This document shows, one piece after another, positions 3,607 to 60,508 of a stretch of DNA of 64,000 nt. This DNA is from Asterias rubens (lineage: Eukaryota). Made by a program: the position numbers and the translations under genes. Each line of letters opens with the position of its first letter. The first letter of the stretch is position 1. The notes below the pieces were generated by a model. The model had not been told where the DNA came from. It searched no databases and worked only from the letters and a program-made list of their open reading frames with translations. The stretch lies in contig NC_047070.1 of assembly GCF_902459465.1 (NCBI RefSeq), forward strand, positions 13,516,001 to 13,580,000. The letters are read 5' to 3'.

Positions 3607-4002
3607 ATGGGGGACCCCAATACAGTAGCGTTGTACTACGTGGGGTGCGGTGAGGTGTGTAGTTCACTACCCGGCAGGCACATCGAGGGCCTCATTCATC
3701 TACTACTCCTTCGGCACCTCAGAGACGAGATACAATCCTCAGATGGTATTGAAGCATTTTCTCCGACCAGACCCCTCGGTGAGGCTATCGGGAGGCGGGT
3801 GGACTTCCTCCAGAGCGGGGACTTCAGCGGCCTGCGAGCCGTCGACCATGAGACAGGGGTGCTGTTCCTGGGGTCGAAGTGGTATGCTGTCGGTCAGTGC
3901 TCTGCTAGCACCACGCTAAGGCAGTGGTTCTCTATCACGGTGGGCTACACGGATGATAAAGAGTGGACTTGCTATGTCTTCAGTGCTCCTTCCAGGCGAC
4001 AG
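3607..4002 (+). CDS. Coding exon 1 (exon likely starts at 3518): N-terminal PTB/PID domain
   Basis: ATG in atcATGG context with an in-frame TAG at 3598-3600 upstream; acceptor ttgtttccacag| at 3517; donor CAG|gtaagt in phase 0. The translation has the PTB pattern YYVGCGEV...SGLRAVDHETGVLF...WFSITV...WTCYVF. Confidence 0.8.
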
Positions 4003-4249
4003 GTAAGTCCTCAAATTTATATTAGGAAATGTTAGAAATGATACAATAGAAATGTGTACGTTCTCATATTGGTCTCCAATCTTGTGGAGTACATCAGAAT
4101 TTAAGTTGTGTTATACTTCGGCTCCATATTTAGCTAGTACGATTGTTCAGGGTGTCAGTAATAATCAACCTGTGTATAGGTTTATAGGCTTATGACAGTT
4201 AAAATTCGGTTGACGAATAGAATATGACTGGCACCGCAAAGATAGATAT

Positions 4250-5085
4250 TAGGGAGCTTTCGATTCGGGACGGTAGGCCCACATGACGGAAGGTAGCACA
4301 ACGCAGTGGTCCGGATGCTCACGCTCGAGCACTCCCGTCGAGTATGTTGGTGTCATAGAATTGACTCAAGTCTCAGTGCAGTGCGGATCTTTTTTCACTG
4401 TCCCATCGCCTAAACATCAGACAACTTTTGCGCGGCTGGCATCCCCCAACCTGTGCCTGGTCATTCTCGGGACCACGATAGCTACATTCTGACGTCGGAT
4501 ATGATTAGGAACCTCTCTTACGAGGACGGGATTAGAATCAAGTCTAACGGTGACACGGCCCACTTGATAACTGTGCAGTGCTTAAAAACCATAAAAAAAC
4601 GTGTTCAAAATTACACCACTCGGTCATGCGTACAGACCGGACGTTGTTTCACCCCGAAATAGTTCTCAAACTATGATGGCACATGCGCCGATCGATTTTT
4701 CCGCTCACTTACACTGATCTCTAGTATAATCAGTAATCCCTTATCGCCTATCGTTTTCCCAGGAAAGACCACTTATCAATTATCATAAATGAGCGTATTT
4801 TCCTTCTTTCTCACATGGGCGCAACCAACCAAGCGCTACAGTACCCTCTACTTGTATTGCATACAAGTACGTGTACTGTGTTACCAGGTCAGCTCCACGC
4901 GTTCCGTCTTCCGTCTTTGTTCAGGCAACCACTGAGTGCATGATCGGTTGGAATTGCACCACGTGGGAAAGTAGGTAAAACAGGCCAATACTGATGCTAA
5001 ATGGCGTCATCTTCCCTGGAAAAAAATACGCTTAGAATTTGTTACCGTCCCCTCGCTCCTCCCCTCCCGAATCGAAAGCTCCCTA
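4250..5085. mobile_element. Non-autonomous DNA element with a perfect 21 bp TIR (PIF/Harbinger-like)
   Basis: TAGGGAGCTTTCGATTCGGGA at 4250-4270 and its exact reverse complement at 5065-5085. The interior is CpG-rich and has no transposase. The superfamily is inferred from the GGG-type termini. Confidence 0.6.
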
Positions 5086-5114
5086 GTGACAAACCATGGA
5101 GACCGCCAACGTTG

Positions 5115-5345
5115 GGGCTAGATGCCTCAGTTTAGTTGGTAGAGCGCCGTCATTTTAATCCGTATTTCGCAGGTTCAAATCCCGCTCTGGTGATTGTTTT
5201 CTTCTTCAACCCCCCTCTAAAAAATATACTAATGCATTAGATAAGATTGTAAGCAACAGGGGTCGCTGGTTCAAATCCCGCCCTTGTAATGTTTCTTTGT
5301 TCAACACCAATTAACTAAAATTTACCTCTACAAACAATTTAGTTC
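5115..5345 (+). mobile_element. Degenerate tRNA-derived SINE head(s)
   Basis: A-box-like TAGTTGGTAG. B-box GGTTCAAATCCCG occurs at 5172 and again at 5268, each followed by a similar tail (ttcttcaacccc / ttgttcaacacc). Confidence 0.55.
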
Positions 5346-7136
5346 TCATTGTGGTTTATTTCCGAATATTATTATACTTTTAGTCTTAAGTTGTATGAGT
5401 AGAGGCCCTCTACCTTTGTAGACAATGCACATAATCATCTCAAAATAAATCAGTAACATTGTCAAACACGGAGTGAATATTGAGAGGGTGTACATAATGT
5501 TATTATAACTAAAGCTGAACTTTTAATTCGTAACTTTTACAATTAAAATATTAATTTGGGGGCAAAATTGGCCAAATCCCAGAAGTATCGTCATTATTAT
5601 TATACTTTCCATACAAATCTTATTTACCCTACGTATTGTGTAGAGTGTAGTAACGTCCGTACTAGGTCTTCCCTGCGCTACCTGCCACTGCGTTGAGATC
5701 ACGTACTTCGACCCACCGCGAAACCTTTAAAACCAACAAGCATTGGCAAATCGTACTTCAATTAATCAGAATTAACGCGGCGCATTGATGACACTTGGCC
5801 GGCGGTGCTGTGCTTGTCGGGGCCGCTAATTCGCTAGATTTGTCTGCGGGCAGTAAGGAGCCCTGACACGGTATACTTGGATTCAGCAGACCCGGCTACT
5901 GATAATTAGTCAAGTGTTTGCAAATGTGTGTGAAGTATGCCGTAAGGTGAAGCTGGCGGGGACAAACATTTTAAAGGGGATATTGTTCACAAATGGGTAG
6001 TTTTACTCATTATATTTCTCATATTTTATGGTGATGGAGCCTTGCGGGTTGGAATGTTATCTATGAAAGGACAATGATGAAGAAAGTCAATGTCAATTAA
6101 GACTGTTAAGGGAAAAAAACACATTAATGGCGAGGGAGGGGAAACCCCATAATCCAGTTTGGAATGTAAACCTAATTCCACATCCGAGGTTTGTAGGGGT
6201 CTGAGATTGAAATGAAGCAAGGGTTGAGATAAGCTAGACCACCGTGCTAACCGATTCCCATGTACTGGCAGACATTATGGCTCAAGAATTAGTGTATGCG
6301 TCGTGATTATAGTTGAGACTTTGGACCGGTAAATGAATATTCGTTAGGTGTCATTTCAATGTCTGCATAATGTAACAAAACACACACATCACGATTTCAA
6401 TAAATATCCACCAGATTGCCAAAGGCTAATCTTGAAGCACACACCCCATGGGTAATATTATTGAATACAGAACACGATGAGAGAAACACGTTCAAGGCAA
6501 CAAACACCTTTTACTTATTACAAGCTTTTACTTTTTTTAACCACAGCTACAACTTGTAAATTATAGATTAGTTATTTTTTTAAGGTTTGTGTACCACCAT
6601 TTTTTCACTGACAGACATTGTCTCATGAGGAATTTTATGTGAATGTGTGTGTGGACAGCTAGAACAAAATTGGCTCTGTTTACCGTCGAATAACGATCAC
6701 CAGTCCTAATTTGAGAATCCCCAAACTGGAAACGGGGTTAGTAGTAGCTTTTTGAAGAAAAAGACAAACCCAGGTACATGTATTTAGTTTATTTTGTCTC
6801 TCCCTCCACCCTTTCTCTCCTTTTCTCTCCTTTTCTCTCTCCTTTGTTTCTCTTCCCCTAACCCCTCTTTCCGGACGGAAAGGAGGGGTGTGCGCCCCAC
6901 GCTCCCCCCCCCTGGACCCGCGCCTGCTTTTTGCTTAACATACATTCACCACGATTATCTACTTTCGGCCCTATAAAATCGACACTCCTGTTTAATAAGC
7001 GCACGCCTATTACACCTTATATGACGATCCTGCTATACGTACCGTAAGACCCGCAGTATATAGTTACGTGACAATACTGCCACGTAATACTCGATACCAT
7101 GTAATACTGTCTACTGGATATATCGGGGTTTTTAAG

Positions 7137-7420
7137 GTTTTTTTATGCAAGTTCGCCCAAAACAAGGCTAAAAGCCACTCTAGGTAAAGGGCTACAATGA
7201 AGAAAACATAATGCAGAAACTCAGTGGAGCTGAAGGTAGGAATTGACATTCCTCTTAAAAGATGGCAGATCATAGGATGAAGGGAAACATGCACCAGGCA
7301 AGGAGTTCCAAAGAGATGCAGTACGAGGGAAAAAGCTACTGGAGTAGTTCTTTGTTCTACATCTCGGCACAGCCACAGTATAAGGATGAGAACAAGCAGA
7401 AAGCCTGGTCTTTGTTTCAA
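7137..7420 (-). mobile_element. 3' end of a non-LTR retrotransposon (Jockey/CR1-group ORF2 C-terminus, 3' UTR and A-tail)
   Basis: The minus strand translates to HPYTVAVPRCRTKNYSSSFFPRTASLWNSLPGACFPSSYDLPSFKRNVNSYL*, followed by a short UTR ending gcataaaaaaa. Confidence 0.75.
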
Positions 7421-7999
7421 TTGTATCAGTTGCAATATCCCTTCCAAGAACTTGAAATTGTGCTAAAATTGTGGTGTGATCTTCATTGTAGAGCGACCGA
7501 TTGTGGTTGGTGGACAAAATTCATGTTATTTACGTTTATTGTGAAAGTTTCACAGCTGCTCGCGTTTGAGAACTTACGGCCTGATAGTTTTAAACACTAT
7601 TTGTCCATTCTTGAGTGTAATTTTGAACTAGATTATCAATATTATTTCACTTCAGTTATTCACTCAATACAAAGTTTTATCTGGAAGCGAGGTTGCCCTG
7701 CAAACATACAAAGCACGCACGCTTTGCAAAGAATTTCAATAAATTATTGGCTAGCTTTGTTTTGCATTTTACTCCGACCGTGCGGATCAATCTTTATCTT
7801 ATGATGAACACATTGGGGTGCGTTGATTCAGTACGGCTGATCACACACACGGTTCCGTGTTGTGGCACGGACATTATGTAGTTCTTTACTCAGAGACTAT
7901 GACTTGAGTTTAGTTCCAAATGCCAAGAAACGTGTATAGTTCATTTTAACTTGAGTTGGGATAAAATATACGAAAAGAAAAAAACAAAAGAAGACTTAA

Positions 8000-16060: not shown

Positions 16061-16302
16061 AGTTTTGAATTTTATCCATACACCGATGTGTGTTAGCACT
16101 GTTTACTCAGTACTTTCCCAAGTCTTGTGAAAAAAATATCACAGGCATGAAACTCGGGTGGGATTCGAACCCTCGACCCTGCAATTCTATAGAGCAGTGT
16201 CTTACCAACTAGACTACCGAGGTTGCCCGGTAGCTAGAGGCAGTTCGAATCCTATGTTTTGGCATCGGTGTCGCAACGATATAAGAGATGTTAAATTTGC
16301 AT
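16061..16302 (-). repeat. Monomer of the ~256 bp repeat containing a tRNA-like unit
   Basis: Homologous to 50095-50290 and 57480-57820. The minus strand carries GTAGTCTAGTTGGTAAGACAC and GGTTCGAATCCC. Confidence 0.8.
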
Positions 16303-23635: not shown

Positions 23636-23639
23636 TTAA

Positions 23640-29485: not shown

Positions 29486-29828
29486 AGGCACTGTACACGT
29501 TTGGTAATTGTCAAAGACCAGTGTTCTCACTTGGTGTATCCCATCATAAGCATAAAATAACGAGTCTGTGAAAAGTTGGGCTCAATTGTTCATCGAAGTT
29601 GCGAGAAAATGATGACAAAAAAACCACCCTTGTTGGATGAAAGACTTCTAGCTAGAAGTCTTGTATTTTTTTATAGTGAGAAATTATTATTTCTCAAAAA
29701 CTACGTTACTTCAGAGGGAGTCGTTTCCCACAACGTTTTATACGATCAACAGCTCTTCAATGCTCGTTACAAAGTCAGTTTTCAAATTAATATTTGTTTT
29801 GAGTAATTACCAAACGTATACCTTCCCT
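29486..29828. mobile_element. TTAA MITE family A variant, opposite orientation
   Basis: TTAA|AGGCACTGTACACGTTTGG...CCAAACGTATACCTTCCCT|TTAA. Confidence 0.85.
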
Positions 29829-30006: not shown

Positions 30007-31528
30007 GCCAGGCGGATGGTGGATGTCATTACCATGAGAATGGACGGAGTTGACCCACATGCTAAGGATCTACCATGTCGACGTGCCTCCTTACAACCAA
30101 CCCTACTCAGTCATCGACGCTCAACAACCCTTGCACCAAAAGCTCTGCTCTCGGCAGACGGCAATAGTAGAGTTGAACTCCGAAGCCCACTCCTTAGTTC
30201 CAGACATCTCCCTTCTCGACTCCGGAAAGCTTCCTTGTCCAACCTTAGAACTATACCGTGTATCACGGCACTGTCCATTAATATGTCGCTGCTGGTCAGA
30301 CAGTTTCAGTCTGTGACGGGTAACCCTGAATTTGATGCAGACGTGTTGCGATTGGCAATCCTCTTTAACGATGTGGGTACCGTCTCACGTATACTACACA
30401 CCCACTTCAGCTTATTCAATGTTAATTATGATGTTGTAGCCGGTCCAAGTACGAAGAATGTCCGACCTCGAAGCGATAGCCTTACTGTTCAGGTGTTGCT
30501 CAACCAGAGTACGGCACTCATCAGCAATTGGGAGAGGAGTCTTGAGGATTCACCTGATCACGATAAACCCAAACCCTCTGTGTTTACCAATGCATTACAT
30601 CTGGCCATTGCCTGTGGCTCTACGGAGGTTGTGCGTCTGCTAGTTAAGTGCGGAGTGGATCCCAACTGCGAAGGAGTGGATCCACCAACGGACCTAGAGC
30701 TGTCAGCTAATCAACAGAACAACGGCACTGATCACGACGGCTTCCAGTACTTCGCAAATCAGATCAACCAGGTCCGGGAGTGGTTTTTAAAACCAGCAAT
30801 TCATCTCGCGACACGGATGGCCAACTGCCTGATTGTCAAGACCTTACTCCGATACGGTGCAGACCCTGAGGCCGAGGACAGTCAAGGATCAACGCCTCTC
30901 CACGTTGCCGCCCAAGCACCTCTGGAGAGGTGGGAATGTGCTTCTATTTTCATTGAACACGGTGCAAGGATATTCAAAGAAGATCAGAATGGAGAACGAC
31001 CTGTTGACATTGCTCCTGGGTTAGAAGTCCTTCAACAGAAAGTTCTACACGAGACTCTGGAAGTGTTTTACCCCGACAAGGGTCCAAATGACCCAGAAGA
31101 GGATGTACTGCAGCAGAGAATCAATTCAGTACGTGACAGTCGGAAGGTCTCACTTGGCTTGCTAGCTCTACCGCGCTTTGTAGCCAAAGTAGCCCGTTCC
31201 CGTTCTCCAAACTCTAGAGATCGCTGCGCCACAGTGTGCATCCCACAGGAGACCAACTCGGAGAGAGAGTCACCAGATCAGATATCCGTAGATAAACGGA
31301 ACCGTAAGATGAGTCTTGGTCTGTGGCACTGGTTGGATAGACGCCGTAGATCAAGGGAAGATCCTGTCAAGATCGACACGGAACATTCTGACTCAACCCC
31401 GGCTCAAGTCACTCAGCAAGAGAAAGCATCTGAGCCTGCTCCCTTGAGTCTACCGAGCGTATTGCCAGGAAGTGCAGAACCCAGACCCAGTCGATCGAGA
31501 ACGCACACCATGGAGAATATAGATGAAG
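30007..31528 (+). CDS. Coding exon 2: end of the PTB helix, ankyrin repeats, basic/Ser-rich regions
   Basis: Acceptor ttttctgaccag| (phase 0) and donor GAAG|gtaagt (phase 1). Ankyrin motifs ALHLAIACGSTEVVRLLVKCGVDPN, AIHLATRMANCLIVKTLLRYGADPEAEDSQG and STPLHVAA...IEHGARIFKEDQNGERPVD. Confidence 0.93.
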
Positions 31529-31772: not shown

Positions 31773-32000
31773 ATCTACATATAAACGTGTCAAAGCCTTT
31801 TCAGGATCTAGACAAGGTGAGAAGACAATGAAGAAGTTTTCAGTTTAGAACTGGGAGGAAAACTCCAGAGATGTGTTCCTGCGAAAACCCACGAAGTCAA
31901 GTAGGGACTGAAAAACCCAATCCACATAGTGCCCCCGGTATAATTCGAACCGGGGTCCCCAGAGTTGGAAGGCGAGGCAAAACACCACTGCGCCAACCTG
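31773..32000 (-). mobile_element. tRNA-derived SINE with a V/Meta-like central motif
   Basis: The minus strand has the head GTTGGCGCAGTGGT...GGTTCGAATT and the body GTGGGTTTT...GTTTTCCTCCCAG. Copies at 50796-51027 and 52129-52320. The domain name is an inference. Confidence 0.75.
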
Positions 32001-32350
32001 CGCGCAACCATGAATATGCAGACGTTTACATACGCCAACGCATTCACCATGTAATAATCTTGCATAATGATGAAAACCAACCTGCGCTGATAATTGATTT
32101 TTGCTGAGCTGAGAACATTTGAATAATTATTAAATCAAGTTGACCCAAAATAAAGAACCGAAAGAGTACAACCAGCCCTTGCTCTTTCATGTCAGTGAAG
32201 ATTAATTATTTGTTATGTTTTCTCTATGGAAATGCTACACTTCAAGTGAAAATCTTATAAATAAATTACAAAGTATAAACAATTTTTTTTTTTTTTTTAA
32301 TATTATTTTTACAAAAAACTGTGATCAGGACTACTGCTCATTCAAATTAA

Positions 32351-33544: not shown

Positions 33545-33735
33545 ATATCTGCAGCGAGACGTTTGCAGCGGAGAGGAGCATCCAGGTCCTACAGCGTCTT
33601 TCTTCCAACACGGAATGTCTTCCATTACTTCTTGAGCGCCTACCATCGTGCCTTCCTAAACTCCAGCCCCTCACTGCAAGCCTCGGTGGTCAAATAGGCA
33701 TGGGTGTCGGTAAATTGCTACGAAATATCCTCCAG
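33545..33735 (+). CDS. Coding exon 3 (ARM/HEAT-like helical segment)
   Basis: Acceptor tcttccttgtctccag| (phase 1; G+AT gives D) and donor CAG|gtaaga (phase 0). Translation DICSETFAAERSIQVLQRLSSNTECLPLLL...GKLLRNILQ. Confidence 0.85.
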
Positions 33736-34672: not shown

Positions 34673-35030
34673 AGACAGTGGACACTATTGGTAAATGTCA
34701 AAGACCAGCCTTCTTACTTGGTGTATCTCAACATAGGCATAAAATAACTAACCTGTGAAAATTTGAGCTCGATTGGTCGTCGGAGTTGCGAGATAAATAT
34801 GAAAGAAAAACACCTTTGTCACACGAAGTTGTGTGCTTTCAGATGCTTGATTTCGAGACCTCGAATTCTCAACTTGAGGTCTCGAAATCAAATTCGTGGA
34901 AAAATACTTCTCTCTCAAAAAACTACGTCACTTCAGAGGGAGCCGTTTCTCACGATGTTTTATACTATCAACCTCTCCCCATTTTTTGCTAATAATTATT
35001 TTGAGTAATTACCAATAGTGTCCACTGCCT
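34673..35030. mobile_element. TTAA MITE family A, opposite orientation
   Basis: TTAA|AGACAGTGGACAC...GTGTCCACTGCCT|TTAA. Confidence 0.88.
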
Positions 35031-36547: not shown

Positions 36548-36927
36548 AGGCAGTGGACACTATTGGTAATTACTCAAAATAATTATCAGCATAAAACCTC
36601 ACTTGGTAACAAGTTATGGGGAGAGGTTGATAGTATAAAACATTGTGAGAAACGGCTCCCTCTGAAGTGGAATGGTTTTTCAAGAAAGAAGTAATTTTCC
36701 ACGAATTTGATTTCGAGACCTCAAGTTTAGAATTTGAGGTCTCGAAATCAAGCATCTGAAAGCACATAACTTCGTGTGACAAGTGTGTTTTTTCTTTCAT
36801 TATTATCTCGCAACTTTGACGACCAATTGAGCTCAAATTTGCACATGTTTGTTATTGTATGCATATGATGAGATACACCAAGTGAGAATTACTGGTCTTT
36901 GACAATTACCAATAGTGTCCAGTGTAT
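36548..36927. mobile_element. TTAA MITE family A
   Basis: TTAA|AGGCAGTGGACAC...GTGTCCAGTGTAT|TTAA. Confidence 0.88.
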
Positions 36928-38075: not shown

Positions 38076-38981
38076 GCGTGCACGGCGCCATCTGGAACTG
38101 ACGGGACCATCGAGGGAACGGAGACGGGTGGAAATCACCATGGTGCCGGCGATTTGGAGGGCATCCGAGGCGAGAGGCTCGGCAAACTGTTCCGTATTGC
38201 CCTTCATTTCGTCAGGTGTGGGGAGTGCGTCCGTGATGCGGCTCTGGGCGTTGTTAACACGGTGCTAAAGCTTCACTTGAAGATGGAGAATCGGACTTCG
38301 TATTGCGCTTGCAGCCCCAAGAAGGTCCGTCCAGGATCAGATATGAACACCTCCCCAAGACGTGCCTTAAGGCAACAAACTGAAAGTACATGCAACAAGA
38401 CGGGAGCAACACTGGGAGTGGTTTGCAACCATCACCCCAACTCAAAAGGGGGCGAATCTCTTTCGGTCCCCTCAAGTCCAAATATGGAAAACTTTAGGCT
38501 TAAGATGGATGCAATTCAACCCAAGACATCTTCTCCTGGATTGTCCAGAAAGCATAGCTTCCGATACAGTTCAAACTCATTCTATGCTAAGAGATTGGTC
38601 CTTCGTAAAAGTGTCCATTCCAAGTTGGGTAAGTTTGCCCGGAGTATTGGCCGGGGTGCCAAGACGAAGCAGACCGCCCAGCAGACGGCAACTCCGAGTG
38701 CGGTCCGGCTTCTCACTACGGTGGACGTAGAGATGCTTTTAGATTGCCTCCATAGTGTCTCCAAACCAGATTCTTCAAGTGAGGATTCTTCCAGTGATAA
38801 CGCACCTTCTTCGACCGGATCGAGATCCGAGGAGTCCGGCCCTACACAGGTCAAGCAGGCCCAGCGGCTCGCCGCTAGGGCCCTGTTGACAATCGCTAGC
38901 TTACCGTCCACCCGGAGAGCTCTTATGCGACCGGAATACCTGTGGAAACTCTTATCTGTGCTTGAGCCTTCATGTGATCAG
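38076..38981 (+). CDS. Coding exon 4 (helical segments interrupted by Ser/Arg-rich low-complexity sequence)
   Basis: Acceptor ctttgaccgttag| (phase 0), 906 nt open frame, donor CAG|gtaagg (phase 0). ARM-like segment QRLAARALLTIASLPSTRRALMRPEYLWKLLSVL. Confidence 0.9.
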
Positions 38982-42794: not shown

Positions 42795-43050
42795 GAGTTT
42801 TTGTGCCTCGTCCTGCAAGTCGTTCAAGTGCTCGTGCTCGATCCGACCAATCACGTGGCCTTAGTCGCGGCAGGTCTCGCTCAAAGAATCGACAAGATTT
42901 CCCGCCAGTATTTCGATCGACCATGCACAGAGGAGCGATCTACTCAGACGGGATCCCCTCTGGCTCTCCATGTCACAAGAATTCAGGTGTACTTGGGGCT
43001 TCTAGACCACAACGACCAAAGGATGTCTCAAAGCCTTCTGAGCAGTGAAG
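42795..43050 (+). CDS. Coding exon 5 (ARM-like)
   Basis: Acceptor tttttgttaaag| (phase 0). Translation EFLCLVLQVVQVLVLDPTNHVALVAAGLAQRI... The donor GAAG|gtgttt is weak, but its phase 1 matches the next exon. Confidence 0.8.
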
Positions 43051-43261
43051 GTGTTTGCCCATTAAAAGTAGTTCATTTCAATTTAGTGTGAATATTTACC
43101 TGGGAAATTCAACAGTATATGCACAATTCCTATTTGTCTTGATGAAGATGTCCTCTCTCATAATGCTTTTGACTTTGAACCCAACTTTTTTCATCCGCTT
43201 ATTTGGGACCGTAATTCAATAAGGCACAACATGCAAACAAACGTCAACGAAACAACAACCA

Positions 43262-43298
43262 TGCATTGTCGCTGTTTAATGACAACGACAATAACAAA

Positions 43299-43387
<89 letters not shown>

Positions 43388-43585
43388 ATATTTAGCAAAC
43401 AGCATCAGCAGCAGTAGCAGTAGCATATTTGTTGTTGAATGACAACGACAAGAACAAAAATAACAATTCAAGAGCAAACAGCATATACGCATCAGCAACA
43501 GCTGCAGCAGCAGCAACAACAACAACAACACAAATCAAAAACAACATTAACACAAACAACAACAAAGGCATCAACAACAAAAGCT
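43262..43585. repeat. Compound (CAA)n/(CAG)n microsatellite with a perfect (CAA)27 core at 43307-43387
   Basis: Directly visible. Confidence 0.95.
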
Positions 43586-45893: not shown

Positions 45894-46132
45894 TAGCCGA
45901 CGCTCATGCTGCTGATCAGGCTTCCGATCAGGCTTCCGATCAGACCACTGAAGACCATTCTTCCAACCCGGGACTGACTACCAGTCGCAGTCGGTATGAC
46001 GACAGGGATTCACAGATCCATGACGGCTTACTACTCAAGATATCACACGCCACTCTTGAGATGCTTGTCTCTATGGCAATCGGTCATCCAGGGACAGAGG
46101 GAGCTAATGGTGCAGCTTGCCAATGCAGTCCG
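45894..46132 (+). CDS. Coding exon 6 (start of the REM/RasGEF_N-like domain); absent from the ORF track
   Basis: Acceptor ttttatgtcacag| (phase 1; G+TA gives V). Open frame ADAHAADQASDQASDQ...LLLKISHATLEMLVSMAIGH...CQCSP. Donor CCG|gtgagt (phase 0). Confidence 0.85.
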
Positions 46133-47878: not shown

Positions 47879-48557
47879 ACAGTTTGCTTATTTGATGTAA
47901 TCAGCAGGTACCGACTGATTTATTTTTATCTAAGCAAAGGCAATAGGGGGCGGGCCATAACTTCTTAAAGCCCAAGCACCCCCCCCCTCCCCCCCCCCCA
48001 CAAATGACACTAGACTGGTGACCAGTGAGGAAGTTCTATCGAAATGCCCCTATACGTTAACGACTGTAAGTACGTACGACGTCAGGGGAACATGCCAGCA
48101 CATCAAGCCAAGTTTTTGTTGTAAACAAATCCAGTTGGCGCTTCGGTTGAATGTGTTCTCTCTTACTCTTCGCAAACCCGTGAGTTTATTAAAAATGACA
48201 AAACATTATGAAATTACAGTTTGCTTATTTGATGTAATCAGCAGGTACCGACTGATTTATTTTTATCTAAGCAAAGGCAATAGGGGGCGGGCCATAACTT
48301 CTTAAAGCCCAAGCACCCCCCCCCCCCCCCCCCCCCCACAAATGACACTAGACTGGTGACCAGTGAGGAAGTTCTATCGAAATGCCCCTATACGTTAACG
48401 ACTGTAAGTACGTACGACGTCAGGGGAACATGCCAGCACATCAAGCCAAGTTTTTGTTGTAAACAAATCCAGTTGGCGCTTCGGTTGAATGTGTTCTCTC
48501 TTACTCTTCGCAAACCCGTGAGTTTATTAAAAATGACAAAACATTATGAAATTACAG
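47879..48557. repeat. Near-perfect tandem duplication with 337/338 bp units
   Basis: Units start at 47879 and 48216 and appear to differ only in the poly-C tract. ACAG occurs at all three junctions. Confidence 0.95.
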
Positions 48558-48779
48558 CTTGGCCCAAGGCTTTTGCAGCGTTCTTTTTTGTTCTCTGTAC
48601 TTCGGCTTGGGCTGGTCACTGCACAGCGAACTGAATCACTGACACTGTGGGCCACACACTGACTGTGTTGTTTTTGATACCGTTACTGTACACCGGGTAT
48701 GGATGGTCAAACACACGTGGACTCGCGGCACCTATTCATGTGTGTACAGTCGATGCGAAATGGCACTCAGCATTCTCAG

Positions 48780-50478: not shown

Positions 50479-50733
50479 ATTACTGAGTCTCATCCTCCAC
50501 ACTCAAGACGCTCATTGAAGACGCCAAAATGCAAGCTGACGGACCGTTGTCGATTTTGTTGCTTCCAAGACACACTCCTGGAGACGCTACCAGTAAGCGT
50601 ACACCCTATCATCCTGCTGAGGTTGTTGGAGCACACACTACTCACCACGCTGCGATGTGTTCAGAATTTGACACGGGCTGATGAAGCAGACTCCAAGGCT
50701 GAGTGGGAATCTAACACAAGACTACAGACAAAG
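50479..50733 (+). CDS. Coding exon 7 (REM-like core)
   Basis: Acceptor ttccatccttag| (phase 0). FQDTLLETLPVSVHPIILLRLL resembles the REM F-x2-T-F/L-L-x-T...P-x2-LL motif. Donor AAG|gtttga (phase 0). Confidence 0.85.
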
Positions 50734-50795
50734 GTTTGATCTTCAATCTTCACAATTTTGAAAGCTTAAAGGAAACAATGTCAAACCTGTACAAA

Positions 50796-51027
50796 ATCTA
50801 CATCTATGATATTTCTTGTCAAAGCCTTTTCAGCATCTAGACAAGATGAGAAGGATGAAGAAATTTCAGTTTTATAAGTGGGAGGAAAACCCCAGAGAAT
50901 TGTTCCAGGGAAACCCCACACAGTCAAGTAGGGACTGTAAAACCCAATCCACATAGTGCCCCCTGTAGGATTCGAACCGGAGTCCCCAGAGGTGGAAGGC
51001 AAGGCTAGACATGACTGCGCCAACCTG
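50796..51027 (-). mobile_element. tRNA-derived SINE (same family as 31773-32000)
   Basis: Aligns with 31773-32000; B-box GGTTCGAATCC on the minus strand. Confidence 0.8.
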
Positions 51028-51103
51028 ACTTTCCTGTATTGAGCCTGTTTCACTCAAGACTGCGCCAACCTGACTTTCCTGTATTGAGCCTGTTTCACTC
51101 AAG
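51013..51103. repeat. 45 bp tandem duplication spanning the SINE 5' end and its flank
   Basis: GACTGCGCCAACCTGACTTTCCTGTATTGAGCCTGTTTCACTCAA occurs twice. Confidence 0.9.
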
Positions 51104-51222
51104 GTCTCTAAATGGTGGTCGTTGGCAATAAAATTGCATCGGTGTAAAAAAATCACAAATTTGCGCTGAATGAATCCGTGATCGTTTGTGATTCTAGGGT
51201 TACTAAAACAATTAGGCCTTAA

Positions 51223-51567
51223 AGGAACACGTTGCCTTGGATTGTTAAAAAATGCATCGGTTAGAAATATGCTTCTCCAAAGCAGAATACAATGATCCGC
51301 ACACATTTGCCTCGAAAATGCGTGGTTTTCCTTTTACTTTTCTTTCCTTTTAACTAACATGGTCGGCCATTTATGATTTGTCTCCCATAAATGGCCGACA
51401 GTGTTTGTCGAAGAGGTAAAAGGAAAACCACGCGATTTTGAGTGATACTTGTGTGGATCATTATATTCTACTTTAGAGTATCTTTCTAACCATGGATGCA
51501 TTTTATAAAAAACGGTTACAAACGCTTATCAAAGATCAACTCAACCAATCAAAGGCAGCGTGTTCCT
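51223..51567. mobile_element. Fold-back TTAA MITE, family D
   Basis: TTAA|AGGAACACGTTGCCTTGG...AAGGCAGCGTGTTCCT, palindromic body; second copy at 54962. Confidence 0.8.
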
Positions 51568-52054: not shown

Positions 52055-52128
52055 TTAACAAAGAGATCTGTGGTAAAGCCATTACCTGTCTTTTTCATTT
52101 AATTTAATTTCATTTCATTTAAGTGGTC

Positions 52129-52320
52129 GGGTTTGCGTAGTGATATCTTTCCTTACCTTCCCCCTCTTGAACACTGGTTTAAATTATGCCAAGGGCACAA
52201 AGGCGGATTGGGTTTTCAGTCCCTACTTGATTGCGTGGGTTTTTCATGGAATAATTCTCAAGGGTTTTCCTCCAACATCAAAAGCTGAAACTTCCTTCAA
52301 TTTCTTTTCCTCATTGGGTT
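52129..52320 (+). mobile_element. Degenerate SINE (same family as 31773-32000)
   Basis: GGATTGGGTTTTCAGTCCCTACTTGATTGCGTGGGTTTT...GGTTTTCCTCC. Confidence 0.7.
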
Positions 52321-53026
52321 CTTGGTGCAGTGATTAATTTTGCTTTTCAAAGAACCCTTGGCTTCTTAACCCCAATAAATAAACTGAAATGAAACATCCA
52401 TCTTTACAACCCTGACATTCGGAGAATGGGTATCTTGGGTTGAGTATTCACTCGTGATTTCATGGTCCTGGAAGCAATTTATGTGGTCTTAAATTAGTTC
52501 TGTGAGGCTTGCTTCATCACTGGGTACAGATAAAAAAAGATGTCATGAATGGATACATTACAATGTAGCACCACCAGACCCAGAAATGGCAAGGGACAGA
52601 TACCTGATGCCAACATGTACGCTGTTCAAGTTTGCTCATGATTAGGCAACCATTCATAATGATGCCATACATTTACCATTTTAGTGTAATGTATCCTACA
52701 TGTCCTGCATGTACATGTGTCCTAGTAGAAATATTTTACCCACGAACGAAAAATTAGTTTTAGTTTTCCGACCTCTTTTGGTCGACCCAGCCCCTGCCCT
52801 CTAACCCCCTTGCGTTTTCTGTGCGCTTTTAGCCTTTCTCTCACTCTACGGACTGCTTATGTTACACCAGTATACCTGTTTATGTTTTCATTGTGTCATG
52901 TGGCATTTGAGAAACACTCGAAATGTCAGTCCTTTTTTGCATTTATACTTTTACACTAAAGGTCCATTTGGTTGGTAAGCAGTTTGCAAAAGCTAATTTA
53001 ATTTTTTCTTTTATAAACTCCTTTAG

Positions 53027-53521
53027 ATTTGTTTGATGCTGATGAGATGGTTGGATACAATTCCAGAGGATTTCTACTACAATGCCTTCCTACGCCAGGA
53101 AGCATCCCTTCTCATCAGACGCCTACCACCCCTCAATGAAAACTTCCAACCTTTGATTAAGAAGATCCAGAATGTCTTGACGACCCCATCAGAGACGACC
53201 CTCCTGCAGAAGAAGACACCAGACAGACCCTACCCTCTCCAACACAACCCAAGTATCTCCTCCACAGGGAGCCTTCGCTTTGCATCACCTGACCTGGAGG
53301 ATGTGGCCTCGGTTGGCTCGTGCTCTTCTAGAACTGGGAGTCGTTCTGCTGCAGTGCCGTCAGGACCCATGAATAAGTTCAAGAGGAATGCCTCATTGAT
53401 ATCACAGGTGTCCAGTAACTCATCCATTAGTGCGTTGCAGAGTATTGCGTGCCTACCGGCGATGATTGTTAAGAAGTCTTGTGTTCTGTACGGAGAGGAT
53501 CTAGATCAACTGTATCAAAAG
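53027..53521 (+). CDS. Coding exon 8 (end of REM, Ser-rich linker, start of FERM F2)
   Basis: Acceptor aactcctttag| (phase 0). ICLMLMRWLDTIPEDF matches the REM V/L-x2-W-x5-DF motif. Ends GEDLDQLYQK with donor AAG|gtaaga (phase 0). Confidence 0.9.
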
Positions 53522-54626: not shown

Positions 54627-54961
54627 TGGAGTTTTTGAGCATTTTTGTAAAGGTCTGTTATCTATAGTAACGCTAACCTTTCCATTCCTGTTTTCTTAGC
54701 TTTATTCATTAACAATGTCAGACATAAATGATTTTAACATTTTGCTTTGTAAAAGCTGATCGTTCTGTAGGCATTTGGGATAGTCATACAGCCGGGTTAT
54801 AATCAGTTGAAGAAATAAACAATTTGAAATGATAACAAAACATATTTTTGAAAGATAAATACACAGACAGTTTAATGAATTAGAACATTGGCAAGATAAT
54901 GTTCATCAATTTGATCATGTTTTGGCTATTTGTCCTAATGATCCATCAAATTTGAGATTAA

Positions 54962-57479: not shown

Positions 57480-57820
57480 ATATTTTTTTTCACAGGAATC
57501 AGGAAAGTACTGAGTATACAGTGCTAACACATTGGTGTATGGGTAAAAACCAGAGTTAATAATCTTTATCCGTGATCCAATATTAACATCTATTATATCA
57601 TTGCGGTACCCGCTGCCAAAACATAGAATTCAAACTGCCTCTAGCCATCGGGCAATCTCGGTAGTCTAGTTGGTAAGACACTGCTCTAGAGTTGCAAGGG
57701 TCGTGGGTTCGAATCCCAGCCGAGTTATATGCCTGTGATATTTTTTCACAGGACTCGGGAAAGTACTGAGTATACAGTGCTCACACACATCGGTGTATAT
57801 TGGTAAAACCAAAATTAATA
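57480..57820 (+). repeat. 1.3 tandem units (256 bp period) of the repeat containing a tRNA-like unit
   Basis: CACAGG..TC.GGAAAGTACTGAGTATACAGTGCT occurs at 57491 and 57747; the tRNA-like segment is 57657-57724. Confidence 0.85.
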
Positions 57821-58145
57821 TCATATGGCATATATGATCAATTTAGGAAAGTAAACATTTTATAGATCACAATGGTACAATTAACTTGAACTTAAAAACA
57901 TGACTTTTGTTGTTTTGGGGGTTCCCACTCATTCATTGACGTTGTTGACACAGGAATCAAAAATAGGTTTTTATTTCTTGATATGTTAATGCTTTGTTCT
58001 TGTAGCAAATATTAACATGATCCAGATCAACATCTTTCAGACAATGATAGTTCCAGTTCCTGTAGACTTGACTCAAGTCCCAATCCCGTGCCATGCATCC
58101 CCAGGAAACTACTGTTTAGTAATGCTCTGCATTCCAAAACCTGTT

Positions 58146-58485
58146 AATAATAACAAATTCTTATATAGCGCATTTCACAATAACCGTATCAATGCTCTTT
58201 ACATTAGTGCCCTGGTCATGGGGCCAATAACATCCCTGTAATGTTTCTCAGCTCCCTAGGGAGTATACAGCCCTGAGCTGCCTGTAAGGCGCTTTTGGCT
58301 TTTTCATACACAATAACAATCTCTACCCTCGCAGGTACCCATTTATACCCCTGGGTGAAGAGAAGCAATTATAGTAAAGTGTCTTGCTCAAGGACACAAG
58401 TGTCACGACCGGGATTCGAACCCACACTCCGGTGAATCAGCACCAGAACTTGAATTCGATGCTCTTAACCACTCGGCCATGACAC
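58146..58485 (-). mobile_element. Full-length tRNA-derived SINE with an L2-like 3' tail
   Basis: Minus strand: A-box TGGCCGAGTGG, B-box GGTTCGAATCC, body CTTCACCCAGGGGTATAAATGGGTACC, tail GCGCTATATAAGAATTTGTTATTATTA. Confidence 0.85.
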
Positions 58486-59782
58486 TATGCGGGACAGGGA
58501 CTTGACGATGTCGCAGTTGCCTGATATGTAAATGTATTCACTTATGAATATGTAGAATTGCTGCGTGATACGTGTTTACCAATCAAATGCACTCAAAAAG
58601 AAGACTAAAAATATATTTTATAATAATTTTAAATAACCAATTAATTATAAAAAGAAAGCACTAGAATTAATGTTCATTTGAATTTGAGTTGATTCGTTGT
58701 AACATACATGTACGTTGGGTCGGTTTTGTTTGAAAAATTTGAATTTTGGGAAGTGCAATTCAACTACTTATAATACCGCCACCCCCTTGCCTGCTGATGA
58801 GTTTGCCCGCCCCACGCGCGCGCCATGTCTAGACGCATGCCTTACAATGTCTTGCACTGTGATGTAACAGAGTGTGAATATTTTACCTGCTTCCACGCTC
58901 CCATTGGTTTTGTACATCTCCCCATTTGGGGAGATTTTCAAATAACAGCGTGCAGAGTAAGAAACGACTTCATCAAGTCCCATTCTCAGGACCACATTTT
59001 GACGGCGAGCGCGCACTGTACTGTATGCTATGGTTTGTTTGATAGTAAGTTGCCGTGTTATGCTTAGAGACCTCTCACACGAGAATGGGACTTGAATCAA
59101 GTCTACAGTTCCTGTGGTCAGTGTCTCCATGAGTAATCATGGAATTGCTTTTTTTGACAGAATGAGACTGAAAGTTATGTAATTTGCAGTAGCACCTTAG
59201 TTGTCTGTTAGGAGTTGTTGTGGTTAGGGTTTTAAAAAACTCAGTGGTGCCAAAACACTGATCAGTAAGTGGGAACATACGTAAGCATACTGATTAAAAT
59301 ACTTATAGAAAACACAGTGTAAGATTATATTTCATACTACTATCATGACATGACTGTTTCACGAATTATAGTCCGTGGTTAAGTTTCATCTTCAAGCTTC
59401 AAACAAACATACAGGGGTTTTGTCAGAGATTGGAAATAGGGTGTCAAACTTGCTATGTGTAAATTGAAGAATACATTGTAGGGCATCCAATTTTTGACTG
59501 ACAATACTTTGACTGACAATTATGAACTATTTTGAAGGGTGTTCAGACATGTCAGAAGATACACAGAAAAGACACTGGGACATCCTTGCAACAAACATTA
59601 TTAATCAAAGATCAACTGATGCAACCTGTCTGAAAATGACACGTATGTTGCCCAATTTAACAAATTTTGTCTTCCAACAGCTGTTCAGTGGTGACTAAAC
59701 CTGTCAAAAGTATTGTGTGGGTTGGTTTTGAAAGCTGTAAACACTCTTTCAAAATTTTGTTTTGTTTTGTTTCTAATCTCAG

Positions 59783-60508
59783 TTGAACAGAGAGATTATT
59801 GAGGAGCATCTCCCATGCAGTCAGGAGGATGCAGTGAAACTAGCTGCTCTGCAGCTGCTCTCTGACTCACCAGGCCAAGCCTCGTCTAGCCAAACCCATC
59901 ATCAACACCACCAGCAACAGATGATGGCTCTGACTACCCAGCAGACTGTCATGGGTCTCCCGACCGTTACATTGGATCTCCCTGCTGAGGACGTTGAAAC
60001 ACCCATTATTGATGATTTTCTTGAGGATGCAACATTTAGCCGTCAGGGTTCCTCCACCACAGATGGCACGCTTCACCTTGGTCATCATCATCCTCATCCG
60101 GGCCTTAGCTCAGATGACAGATATGGAATCTTGAAGACCTCTGGGCCATGTAAAGTCCCCAATACTGAGGACAGTCCATTACGGACCGGAGTTGTCTTAT
60201 CTGGAGGTGGCCCAACTGCTATCTCCTCACACTCCACAGCCGGCATTCCTGAGGAGACAGCGGAGAAACTCTGCCTGGATAGGGTGAAGAGATGCCTTCC
60301 CCGCGGGTATACTAACATCCGGGCTGTACAGAAGTCTGCTAAGAGGTGTTTTCAGTGTTACTCCAGCGCTCTGGTGGATGTACATGATCCCTCGGAGCGG
60401 AGTTCAAGGGCAAAGCAGATGTACGTTGAGTTTTGCAAACAGTTGCCTCTCTATGGGAGTGGGATGTTTCATGTGAAGGAACTGGCCGGGAGTCGCCTTC
60501 GAAAAAAG
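59783..60508 (+). CDS. Coding exon 9: FERM central (F2) lobe with a long insert, running into F3
   Basis: Acceptor ttctaatctcag| (phase 0). The spliced junction reads LDQLYQK|LNREIIEEHLPCSQEDAVKLAALQL, and the exon contains MYVEFCKQLPLYGSGMFHV; both are FERM hallmarks. Donor AAG|gtaatt. Confidence 0.92.

What the first reader, a model, noticed from the sequence alone, without database searches (positions are those of the whole stretch)
3607..60508. Unassigned large signalling scaffold: PTB - ankyrin - ARM-like - REM (RasGEF_N) - FERM in one polypeptide
Seen in sequence: nine exons join with matching phases (0,1,0,0,1,0,0,0) into 1662 open codons. Domain motifs run across the junctions (PTB helix at exon 1/2, FERM F2 helix at exon 8/9), which independently supports the chain. 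Established knowledge: KRIT1/CCM1 has ANK+FERM and binds the PTB of CCM2; ANKS1 has ANK-SAM-PTB with the PTB at the C-terminus; REM normally accompanies a CDC25 domain in Ras/Rap GEFs. I know of no named protein with this order. Inference: an uncharacterised membrane-cytoskeleton adaptor that combines receptor-tail binding (PTB, FERM) with small-GTPase-related modules, placing CCM1-like and CCM2-like domain types in one chain, possibly an invertebrate family absent from vertebrates.
Basis: partly seen in the sequence, partly recalled or inferred. Interest (0 to 1): 0.85.

Follow-up and report, generated by a model that had tools for sequence, protein, structure and literature searches.

The report
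Front half of giant starfish PLC-epsilon
The nine exons are real and transcribed, but they are the front 45% of a starfish phospholipase C-epsilon gene, not a stand-alone scaffold. This long invertebrate form carries ankyrin, armadillo-like, REM and talin-like FERM modules that vertebrate PLC-epsilon lacks.

Summary
**Observation: confirmed.** Nine GT-AG exons (3607-60508, + strand) join in phases 0,1,0,0,1,0,0,0 into 1662 open codons. Exons 2-9 equal residues 1-1521 of an Asterias rubens RefSeq protein of 3526 aa. RNA contigs join exon 1 to exon 2.

**Interpretation: only partly right.**
- The chain has no stop. The RefSeq model continues past the window with FERM F3, a CDC25 RasGEF domain, EF-hand, PLC-X/Y, C2 and two RA domains, which is the PLC-epsilon architecture.
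- So the "orphan" REM has its CDC25 partner, and the gene is an orthologue of a named gene (PLCE1).
- Ankyrin repeats and FERM_M score significantly in Pfam.
- REM scores only below threshold, but its two motifs are conserved in four phyla.
- The ARM-like call rests on AlphaFold helix repeats and protein language-model (Atlas) features.
- The PTB-like call is weak and is seen only in sea stars.
- No F1 lobe was found. F2-F3 resembles talin most (E 4e-12), with KRIT1 far weaker (4e-4).

**Distribution.** The same collinear long form occurs in echinoderms, hemichordates, molluscs and arthropods. Vertebrate PLCE1 N-termini show no detectable homology to it.

**Literature.** I found no paper describing this extension. 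A 2026 review calls the mammalian N-terminus homology-free.

**Verdict.** An undescribed variant of a known enzyme family, of moderate interest.

The parts
3516..3606 (+). 5' untranslated part of the first coding exon. RNA contigs enter at about 3516 from a further upstream exon that is not in the window.
   Evidence: contigs of runs X1 and X2 lie on 3516-4003, with a loose end before 3516; that loose-end sequence is not found in the window.
3607..4002 (+). Coding exon 1 (132 codons, ends in phase 0). PTB-like domain candidate; found in sea-star orthologues only.
   Evidence: Searches give the boundaries. Identity to the Patiria and Acanthaster N-termini is 77% and 73%. Atlas features: all ten best families are PID/PTB/ICAP-1, score 0.89. 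Pfam gives no hit. AF2 mean pLDDT is 38.6. Foldseek's top hit is the ICAP1 PTB domain, but at E 0.05 and TM 0.26-0.35.
30007..31528 (+). Exon 2. It holds the helix that continues the PTB-like domain, a basic/Ser-rich linker, about 4-5 ankyrin repeats and a disordered tail. It ends in phase 1.
   Evidence: Pfam Ank E 2.9e-16 and Ank_2 E 1e-13. Junctions. The join to exon 1 is seen in RNA contigs.
33545..33735 (+). Exon 3: first helices of the ARM-like region.
   Evidence: Conserved across phyla (block ARM1).
38076..38981 (+). Exon 4: helical segment, a long Ser/Pro-rich stretch that is low-complexity by eye (its structure was not predicted), then the start of the high-confidence ARM-like repeats.
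   Evidence: Atlas features point to ARM/HEAT-type families at 0.90-0.92. In AF2 model 2, residues 31-170 have pLDDT 84-95.
42795..43050 (+). Exon 5: ARM-like three-helix repeats.
   Evidence: AF2 helices H32-48/51-57/60-68, H76-90/93-101/104-116 and H129-143/151-154/157-170. Atlas: all ten best families are of the ARM clan, 0.92-0.95.
45894..46132 (+). Exon 6: end of the ARM-like repeats and a low-complexity linker.
50479..50733 (+). Exon 7: first REM motif (LP..VHP...LRLL.H.L).
   Evidence: The motif is found in 8 of the 10 long orthologues scanned, from four phyla. AF2 helices 262-333 have pLDDT 71-89.
53027..53521 (+). Exon 8: second REM motif (..RWLDTIPEDF..), a disordered linker of about 80 aa where an F1 lobe would be expected, and the start of the first F2 helix.
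   Evidence: Pfam RasGEF_N is below threshold in 5 of 6 echinoderm sequences (best E 9e-4), and also in a scorpion and Saccoglossus. The top PDB profile hit is the RasGRP2 REM at E 0.2. AF2 model residues 378-456 have pLDDT below 50.
59783..60508 (+). Exon 9: FERM F2 lobe with a disordered insert of about 150 aa, plus the first strand of F3. It ends at a GTAATT donor in phase 0, and the gene continues outside the window.
   Evidence: Pfam FERM_M E 3.1e-9. The family F2-F3 profile matches talin at E 4e-12. The A. rubens single sequence matches talin-2 at E 0.004. Donor position.

Best explanation
The window lies wholly inside one very large Asterias rubens gene, the orthologue of phospholipase C-epsilon. 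The nine exons encode its N-terminal ~1,660 residues.

**Domain order of the full protein (~3,660 aa with exon 1)**
- PTB-like domain (sea stars only; weak call)
- ankyrin repeats
- ARM-like solenoid interrupted by stretches that are disordered in the model or low-complexity
- REM
- talin-like FERM F2-F3 with no F1 found
- CDC25 RasGEF, a region without a Pfam hit (where vertebrate PLC-epsilon has its PH domain), EF-hand, PLC-X/Y, C2, RA1 and RA2

**Shown**
- the exon chain
- the transcribed exon 1/2 junction
- identity of exons 2-9 with the RefSeq model
- the Ank, FERM_M, RasGEF, PLC-X/Y, C2 and RA domains
- collinearity of the whole arrangement in four phyla

**Inferred mechanism**
- REM and CDC25 form the Ras/Rap exchange module. 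The FERM F2-F3 is inserted between them, in the position where, from my recollection of those proteins, Epac2 and PDZ-GEF carry an RA domain.
- By analogy with talin, the F2-F3 pair probably places the enzyme on PIP2-rich membrane or on NPxY-type receptor tails. That would bring both the exchange factor and the lipase to their membrane-bound substrates.
- The ankyrin and ARM-like modules, and the echinoderm PTB-like domain, probably add protein docking sites.
For: - **Exon chain.** It equals P0001 residues 1-1521.
- **Rest of P0001.** It carries FERM_M, RasGEF (E 1.5e-18), EF-hand_like, PI-PLC-X (E 1e-61), PI-PLC-Y, C2 and 2 RA stretches.
- **Orthologues.** The closest relatives by the lipase core are proteins named PLC epsilon-1, from sea urchins through to vertebrates.
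- **Long forms elsewhere.** Forms with Ank + FERM_M + RasGEF + PLC occur in Diadema, Saccoglossus, a scallop, an oyster, a mayfly and a scorpion. Their ANK, ARM, F2, F3 and CDC25 blocks are collinear.
- **Exon 1.** The join to exon 2 is seen in RNA contigs and in three other sea-star gene models.
- **Structure model.** AF2 gives ARM-like repeats, a helical REM-like domain, F2, F3 and a confident CDC25 domain. CDC25 structures match at Z 14-17.
- **REM.** Sub-threshold RasGEF_N hits in seven sequences from three phyla. Both REM motifs are visible across phyla.
- **FERM type.** The F2-F3 profile hits talin at E 4e-12, myosin VII at 1e-5 and KRIT1 at 4e-4.
Against: - I have no read-level evidence in A. 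rubens for a transcript joining exon 9 to the PLC exons. That link rests on RefSeq models and on the same architecture in other species.
- The three A. rubens RefSeq isoforms start in exon 2 and omit exon 1.
- Shorter PLC-epsilon models starting at F2 exist in several invertebrates. The long N-terminus may therefore belong to only some isoforms, or those models may be truncated.
- RasGEF_N and PID/PTB never reach Pfam thresholds.
- In the AF2 model the REM-containing alignments have rmsd 17-21 Å, so REM-CDC25 packing is not shown.
- The membrane and tail-binding role of F2-F3 is analogy only.
Confidence: 0.88

Rival explanations
1. One reading: the nine exons make a stand-alone membrane-cytoskeleton adaptor (PTB-ANK-ARM-REM-FERM) that is separate from any enzyme.
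For: The chain is open and domain-rich within the window. No enzyme domain lies inside the window.
Against: - There is no stop codon, and exon 9 ends at a phase-0 donor inside F3.
- F3 and the CDC25 partner of the REM lie in the next exons of the RefSeq model.
- The same continuous architecture is predicted independently in four phyla.
Confidence: 0.03
2. Gene-model fusion artefact: an upstream ANK/ARM scaffold gene and a downstream FERM-CDC25-PLC gene were merged by automatic annotation, with the true boundary somewhere before exon 9.
For: - Short PLC-epsilon models in a hemichordate, a millipede, spiders and a scorpion begin at F2.
- The long models are mostly labelled 'uncharacterized'.
- All of the full-length evidence consists of predicted models.
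Against: - REM motifs upstream of F2 are conserved in four phyla and belong functionally with the CDC25 domain.
- All exon phases are compatible and the frame is open across all nine exons.
- One RNA contig of 3547 nt starts in exon 1 and runs on past it for 2880 nt, far into the coding chain.
- Independent annotations in more than ten species give the same join.
Confidence: 0.06
3. The extension is real, but the long form is a minor, tissue-restricted isoform. The main product would start from an internal promoter near the FERM/CDC25 region and resemble vertebrate PLC-epsilon in size.
For: - Short models starting at F2 coexist with long ones in Saccoglossus and Centruroides.
- Raw-read depth on exon 1 is very low in run X9 (5 reads).
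Against: - All A. rubens, A. amurensis, Patiria and Acanthaster RefSeq isoforms seen here are long.
- The extension is under clear sequence constraint across phyla.
Confidence: 0.2

Closest known systems
Vertebrate phospholipase C-epsilon (PLCE1)
   Same: Orthologous C-terminal ~2,000 residues: CDC25 RasGEF, EF-hand, PLC-X/Y, C2 and two RA domains. Identity over EF to C2 is 44-46%. The CDC25 start (..FPEEVA..LTE) aligns by hhalign.
   Different: Vertebrate proteins are about 2,300 aa with no Ank or FERM_M hit. Their N-terminal ~500 residues show no detectable homology to the starfish F2-F3 (hhalign probability 0.6%) or to ANK-ARM-REM (0.1%). A 2026 review states that the mammalian N-terminus shares no homology with other proteins (PMC13022664).
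Talin head, F2-F3 lobes
   Same: Best solved-structure match of the F2-F3 profile. E is 4e-12 over about 105 residues, running from the end of F2 through the first strands of F3 and including the basic loop after the first F3 strand. The single starfish sequence also hits talin-2 best.
   Different: No F0 or F1 lobes and no rod. F2 carries a disordered insert of about 150 aa. The pair sits between a REM and a CDC25 domain. Integrin or lipid binding is untested.
KRIT1/CCM1 (ANK + FERM)
   Same: Ankyrin repeats N-terminal to a FERM. The KRIT1 FERM is a significant but weaker match (E 4e-4). A KRIT1/FRMD8 C-lobe profile hits the oyster orthologue at E 0.004.
   Different: About 900 residues of ARM-like and REM sequence separate ANK from FERM. 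No F1 lobe was found, whereas KRIT1 has a full F1-F3 FERM (my background knowledge). Talin is the closer FERM. Not an orthologue.
REM-[insert]-CDC25 exchange factors (Epac2, PDZ-GEF/RAPGEF2, RalGDS, SOS, RasGRP)
   Same: The CDC25 fold matches at Z 14-17. There is a REM-like helical domain upstream, with another domain inserted between REM and CDC25. From my recollection, Epac2 and PDZ-GEF carry an RA domain in that position. The top sequence hit of the REM profile is the RasGRP2 REM.
   Different: The insert is a FERM F2-F3 pair rather than an RA domain. REM scores below Pfam's threshold. The exchange module is fused to a phospholipase.
ICAP1 / Dab-type PTB domains
   Same: Language-model features and a low-confidence fold search both put PTB domains first, ICAP1 above all. 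The secondary-structure order (helix, five strands, C-terminal helix) fits a minimal PTB.
   Different: No Pfam or PDB sequence match. The model has pLDDT 38.6. The domain is seen only in sea-star gene models.

Membership tests
Phospholipase C-epsilon (PLCE1 orthologue) | PLC X and Y catalytic boxes with EF-hand and C2 | tested here: met
   P0001: PI-PLC-X E 1.3e-61, PI-PLC-Y E 6.9e-35, EF-hand_like E 2.2e-11, C2 E 1.1e-9. All lie outside the window, in the same RefSeq protein whose residues 1-1521 are encoded here.
Phospholipase C-epsilon (PLCE1 orthologue) | CDC25-type RasGEF domain N-terminal to the lipase core | tested here: met
   Pfam RasGEF E 1.5e-18 at P0001 1656-1836. AF2 pLDDT 80-95, with matches to RasGRP, Epac2 and RasGRF CDC25 domains at Z 14-17.
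Phospholipase C-epsilon (PLCE1 orthologue) | Two C-terminal RA domains | tested here: met
   Pfam RA E 1.6e-15, two stretches.
Phospholipase C-epsilon (PLCE1 orthologue) | Closest relatives are named PLC-epsilon proteins | tested here: met
   after the sea stars, the best hits are S. purpuratus and Lytechinus 'PLC epsilon-1' (57%), hemichordate PLC epsilon-1-like (51%) and vertebrate PLCE1 (44-46%).
Phospholipase C-epsilon (PLCE1 orthologue) | One transcript links the window's exons to the lipase exons | not testable with these tools
   The downstream exons lie outside the window and read laying was limited to one stretch. Support comes only from RefSeq models in at least five echinoderms and from the same architecture in other phyla.
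FERM domain | F1 ubiquitin-like lobe | tested here: not met
   There is no FERM_N, RA or ubiquitin hit upstream of F2 in eight orthologues. The ~80 residues before F2 are disordered in AF2, with pLDDT below 50.
FERM domain | F2 acyl-CoA-binding-like lobe (FERM_M) | tested here: met
   FERM_M E 3.1e-9 on exon 9 alone, 37.6 bits against a 23.8-bit cut-off. Significant in all eight orthologues scanned.
FERM domain | F3 PTB/PH-like lobe following F2 | tested here: met
   The profile hits talin F2-F3 at E 4e-12. AF2 gives five strands plus a C-terminal helix. Sub-threshold IRS, PH_SLA1 and KRIT1_FRMD8_FERM_C hits also occur. Only the first strand is inside the window.
RasGEF REM (RasGEF_N) | Pfam RasGEF_N at the gathering score | tested here: not met
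   Starfish score 16.3 bits against a cut-off of 28.3. E is 9e-4 to 0.012 in five echinoderm sequences, 0.005 in a scorpion and 0.001 in Saccoglossus.
RasGEF REM (RasGEF_N) | Lies N-terminal to a CDC25 domain in the same chain, with both characteristic motifs | tested here: met
   Both motifs are conserved upstream of F2-F3-CDC25 across four phyla. The top PDB hit is RasGRP2 REM residues 65-103.
RasGEF REM (RasGEF_N) | Helical domain packing against the CDC25 helical hairpin | tested here: inconclusive
   VIA alignments to REM+CDC25 chains gain about 110-130 residues when the REM region is included, but at rmsd 17-21 Å. I had no access to model coordinates.
PTB/PID domain | Sequence profile match | tested here: not met
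   No Pfam hit at E up to 10 for three sea-star N-termini. No PTB chain appears in the PDB profile search.
PTB/PID domain | PH-like beta-sandwich capped by a C-terminal helix | tested here: inconclusive
   AF2 pLDDT is 38.6, from only 4 sequences, but the element order fits a PTB. Foldseek's top hit is the ICAP1 PTB at E 0.05 and TM 0.26-0.35. Atlas features are all PTB families at 0.89.
Ankyrin repeats | Pfam Ank / Ank_2 above threshold | tested here: met
   Ank 59.1 bits (cut-off 21.1) and Ank_2 52.1 bits (cut-off 27.3) on exon 2.
Armadillo-type repeats | Tandem three-helix repeats of about 40 residues; Pfam Arm | tested here: inconclusive
   No Pfam Arm hit. AF2 gives three consecutive three-helix units at pLDDT 84-95. 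All ten best Atlas families are ARM-clan, at 0.92-0.95.

The most novel reading that the evidence does not exclude
The ancestral bilaterian PLC-epsilon was a ~3,500-aa enzyme-scaffold whose Ras/Rap exchange module was REM-(talin-like F2-F3)-CDC25. The talin-like lobes tether it directly to integrin-type NPxY tails or PIP2 patches. Adhesion receptors, Rap activation and PIP2 hydrolysis would then be coupled in one polypeptide. Vertebrates replaced this front end with the enigmatic, homology-free N-terminus, and echinoderms added a second, PTB-like tail reader.
Probability: 0.25. Interest if true: 0.7.

Novelty: new variant of a known kind. Interest (0 to 1): 0.45.

Why it matters
PLC-epsilon is a much-studied node linking Ras, Rap and Rho GTPases to phosphoinositide hydrolysis, with roles in the heart, the kidney and cancer. 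The structure and role of its N-terminus are an acknowledged open question (PMC13022664).

This analysis shows that invertebrate orthologues from four phyla carry a structured front end of about 1,500 residues: ANK, ARM-like, REM and talin-like F2-F3. That has three consequences.
- It supplies a REM partner for the CDC25 domain.
- It suggests a concrete membrane or receptor-tail targeting mechanism that can be tested.
- It frames the vertebrate N-terminus as a lineage-specific replacement.

For genome annotation, LOC117294412 and its "uncharacterized" relatives can be named as long-form PLC-epsilon.

Tried and rejected
- **Pfam on the N-terminus.** PID/PTB profiles gave nothing.
- **PTB-like profile against PDB sequences.** Only chance ribosomal hits appeared.
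- **AF2 of the PTB-like region.** With only 4 sequences it gave pLDDT 38.6, so its fold search is only a lead.
- **Word-based homologue searches on the N-terminal part.** Residues 1-1530 drew ankyrin proteins, and residues 840-1640 returned only sea stars. Orthologues in other phyla appeared only when I searched with the lipase core.
- **Single-sequence phmmer of exon 9 against the PDB.** Nothing relevant.
- **Retention in vertebrates.** An apparent 89% hhalign match was driven entirely by the CDC25 start. With that anchor removed, probability fell to 0.6%. For ANK-ARM-REM it was 0.1%. I rejected the idea that vertebrate PLCE1 keeps a recognisable remnant.
- **KRIT1/CCM2 kinship.** Rejected, because talin is the far better FERM match.
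- **Intronic ORFs.** Ten ORFs of 116-197 aa (nine intronic, one just upstream of exon 1) had no Pfam family.
- **Fragments P0004 and P0007.** Both are single-exon ANK fragments: P0004's cluster lies on marine-metagenome contigs and P0007 on unidentified sequencing-run contigs. They gave no architectural information.
- **Literature.** Three searches found no description of a FERM- or ANK-bearing PLC-epsilon.
- **Earlier notes of this scan.** Nothing relevant.

Full report

Yes. Stop-free stretches on the + strand and tblastn of a database protein located the coding blocks. A script then found the unique GT-AG boundaries that reproduce that protein.

| Exon | Coordinates |
|---|---|
| 1 | 3607-4002 |
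| 2 | 30007-31528 |
| 3 | 33545-33735 |
| 4 | 38076-38981 |
| 5 | 42795-43050 |
| 6 | 45894-46132 |
| 7 | 50479-50733 |
| 8 | 53027-53521 |
| 9 | 59783-60508 |

The phases are 0,1,0,0,1,0,0,0, and the total is 1662 codons with no stop.

Exons 2-9 translate identically to residues 1-1521 of P0001. P0001 is XP_033632686.1, "uncharacterized protein LOC117294412 isoform X1" of Asterias rubens.

Exon 1 is missing from the three A. rubens isoforms but is supported in two ways:
- It is present at the N-terminus of the A. amurensis (P0210), Patiria miniata (P0151; 77% identity) and Acanthaster planci (P0152; 73%) models.
- Contigs from two RNA runs of one sample cover 3516-4003. They continue with the first 30 bases of exon 2 from 30008, with one SNP.

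The same contigs enter at about 3516 from an upstream exon that is not in the window. The gene therefore begins before the window.

**2. What the chain really is**

Position 60508 is a donor (GTAATT), not an end. P0001 has 3526 residues. After the part encoded in the window, Pfam finds these domains:
- the rest of a FERM central domain
- RasGEF/CDC25 (E 1.5e-18)
- EF-hand_like
- PI-PLC-X (E 1e-61)
- PI-PLC-Y (E 7e-35)
- C2
- two RA stretches

A CDC25 domain in front of a PLC core, with two RA domains behind it, is the architecture of PLC-epsilon.

A search with the lipase core gave these hits in order: the sea stars, then sea-urchin proteins named PLC epsilon-1 (57% identity), then hemichordate, mollusc and arthropod PLC epsilon-1-like proteins, then hundreds of vertebrate PLCE1 sequences (44-46%).

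**3. The long form is not a starfish oddity or a one-off annotation error**

In one search, precomputed Pfam lists show Ank + FERM_M + RasGEF + PLC-X/Y + C2 + RA in the following species:

| Species | Group | Length (aa) |
|---|---|---|
| Diadema antillarum | sea urchin | 3611 |
| Saccoglossus kowalevskii | hemichordate | 3249 |
| Ylistrum balloti | scallop | 3699 |
| Saccostrea cucullata | oyster | 3565 |
| Neocloeon triangulifer | mayfly | 3977 |
| Centruroides sculpturatus | scorpion | 3477 |

Other invertebrate models carry FERM_M but no Ank. Some of these start at F2, so they may be truncated models or short isoforms.

BLAST of starfish segments shows that the ANK, ARM1, ARM2, F2, F3 and CDC25 blocks occur in the same order in all the long forms. 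A nine-species alignment of the extension has invariant columns throughout.

Vertebrate PLCE1 proteins (about 2,300 aa) carry neither Ank nor FERM_M.

**4. Domain by domain**

*Ankyrin.* Significant: Ank E 2.9e-16 and Ank_2 E 1e-13 on exon 2.

*ARM-like.*
- There is no Pfam Arm hit.
- AF2 on a 26-sequence alignment gives three consecutive three-helix units of about 40 residues at pLDDT 84-95. These correspond to the end of exon 4, exon 5 and the start of exon 6.
- The ten nearest language-model (Atlas) families are all ARM-clan, at 0.92-0.95 (weaker).

I accept "ARM-like solenoid" as probable.

*REM.*
- Pfam RasGEF_N never reaches its 28.3-bit cut-off. It is nevertheless the only recurring family on this segment. 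E runs from 9e-4 to 0.012 in five of six echinoderm sequences, 0.005 in the scorpion and 0.001 in Saccoglossus.
- The top PDB hit of the echinoderm profile is the REM of RasGRP2, residues 65-103, at E 0.2.
- Both classical REM motifs can be seen in orthologues from four phyla. The first is LP..VHP...LRLL.H.L in exon 7. The second is ..W......DF.......FL in exon 8. In protostomes they are separated by a variable low-complexity insert.
- AF2 gives a helical domain here at pLDDT 71-89.
- VIA-align alignments to REM+CDC25 structures (Epac2, SOS, Rlf, yeast Cdc25) grow from about 190 to about 300-325 residues when this region is included. The rmsd is 17-21 Å, so packing on CDC25 is not shown.

I read this as a divergent but real REM. 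Its CDC25 partner lies about 500 residues downstream, outside the window.

*FERM.*
- F2 is significant: FERM_M E 3.1e-9 on exon 9 alone. It carries a disordered insert of about 150 aa.
- F3 follows in the next exons. AF2 shows five strands and a helix.
- An 18-sequence F2-F3 profile gives the following matches:

| PDB match | E-value |
|---|---|
| talin-1/2 F2-F3 | about 4e-12 |
| myosin VIIa | 1e-5 |
| KRIT1 | 4e-4 |
| kindlin-2 | 0.05 |

- The single starfish sequence also hits talin-2 best, at E 0.004.
- No F1 lobe is present. No FERM_N, RA or ubiquitin hit occurs upstream of F2 in eight orthologues. The ~80 residues between REM and F2 are disordered in the model.

So this is a talin-like F2-F3 pair, not a complete FERM, and it is not KRIT1-like.

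*PTB-like exon 1.* This is the weakest call.
- There is no Pfam hit at E up to 10 and no PTB chain in a PDB profile search.
- AF2 with four sequences gives pLDDT 38.6. The element order (helix, five strands, C-terminal helix across the exon 1/2 junction) does fit a minimal PTB.
- Foldseek's top hit is the ICAP1 PTB domain, at E 0.05 and TM 0.26-0.35.
- Atlas features are all PID/PTB/ICAP-1 families at 0.89.

This is a lead, not a demonstration.

The peptide is found only in sea-star models. Sea-urchin models start at the helix that opens exon 2. The upstream exon may therefore simply be unannotated in sea urchins.

**5. Vertebrates**

An initial hhalign match between the invertebrate REM-to-CDC25 profile and vertebrate PLCE1 residues 1-560 (probability 89%) was driven by the shared CDC25 start. 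With that anchor removed, probability fell to 0.6% for F2-F3. For ANK-ARM-REM it was 0.1%.

The vertebrate N-terminus is therefore not detectably related to the invertebrate extension.

A 2026 review (PMC13022664) says the following about mammalian PLC-epsilon:
- AlphaFold3 predicts no secondary structure for it.
- Its function is an open question.

That review mentions neither FERM nor invertebrate forms. Three full-text searches found no paper describing a FERM- or ANK-bearing PLC-epsilon. The searchable library is limited, so absence there is not proof of novelty.

**6. How it most likely works**

*Shown:* the domain content and order, and their conservation.

*Inferred:*
- REM and CDC25 form the Ras/Rap exchange module. 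From my recollection of those proteins, Epac2 and PDZ-GEF carry an RA domain between the two; here the inserted unit is a talin-like F2-F3.
- Talin F2-F3 binds acidic phosphoinositide membranes and NPxY-type tails (established knowledge about talin).
- In the profile alignment, the basic loop after the first F3 strand is retained. The starfish sequence there is ..KELAGSRLRKK.. and the family consensus is ..KELLRGKTKKK...
- I therefore propose that F2-F3 positions the enzyme on PIP2-rich membrane or on receptor tails. PIP2 is also the lipase's substrate, and Rap/Ras are membrane-bound. Such positioning would serve both catalytic activities.
- The ANK and ARM-like modules, separated by long disordered or low-complexity Ser/Pro-rich linkers, probably add protein docking and regulatory sites.

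None of this was tested.

**7. Rivals**

*Stand-alone scaffold.* Excluded by the open phase-0 donor inside F3 and by the downstream partner domains.

*Annotation fusion of two genes.* Unlikely, for three reasons:
- The REM belongs with the CDC25.
- Independent models in more than ten species agree.
- A 3.5-kb RNA contig runs from exon 1 well into the chain.

It is still not excluded at read level for the exon 9 to CDC25 link.

*Minor isoform.* The long form may be a minor isoform alongside a short one that starts near F2. This is compatible with the data and remains open.

**8. Verdict**

The headline interpretation is wrong. This is long-form PLC-epsilon, a known enzyme family, with a conserved and, as far as I could find, undescribed invertebrate N-terminal extension.

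Noticed in passing
window 3640-3660: Four raw RNA reads of run X9 leave exon 1 at about 3653, next to a GTGAGG donor-like site. They continue into a 30-base sequence that occurs nowhere in the window. Possible explanations are an alternative donor to a distant exon, another allele or locus, or a chimera.
   Followed up: partly
upstream of window 3516: RNA contigs carry about 180-190 further bases 5' of position 3516 that are absent from the window. The gene's first (untranslated) exon therefore lies more than 3.5 kb upstream, outside the window.
   Followed up: partly
window 16149-16223 (-) and 57655-57727 (+): ARAGORN calls a tRNA-Leu(TAG) and a tRNA-Ser(AGA) inside introns 1 and 8. They could be real tRNA genes or tRNA-derived SINE heads.
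   Followed up: no
window 31811-32134, 50784-51333, 52077-52334: The translated frames share a peptide (..LWG.RFE.YRGHYVDWV.QSLLD.VGF..) in three different introns, which suggests an interspersed repeat family. A second family (..CE.LSSIGR.SCE..) recurs at 29561-29803, 34748-35005 and 36573-36851 (-).
   Followed up: no
window 47961-48631: Two adjacent stretches of about 340 bases translate to nearly the same peptide. This looks like a tandem duplication inside intron 6.
   Followed up: no
window 43250-43400: A long ACN/poly-Thr-type microsatellite lies just downstream of exon 5, in intron 5.
   Followed up: no
P0207 (UPI000222AE20, in the cluster of P0007): This 591-aa fragment is 46% identical to exon 2 and its sequence is very close to Diadema P0213. 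It begins exactly at the helix that opens exon 2 (..ARRLVEAVGRRME..). This hints that an unannotated PTB-like upstream exon also exists outside sea stars.
   Followed up: no
P0216 vs P0218 (Saccoglossus); P0321 vs P0219 (Centruroides): Long and short PLC-epsilon models coexist in the same species. In Saccoglossus the two are identical where they overlap, which suggests isoforms or differing annotations. In the scorpion they differ in sequence, which suggests paralogues.
   Followed up: partly
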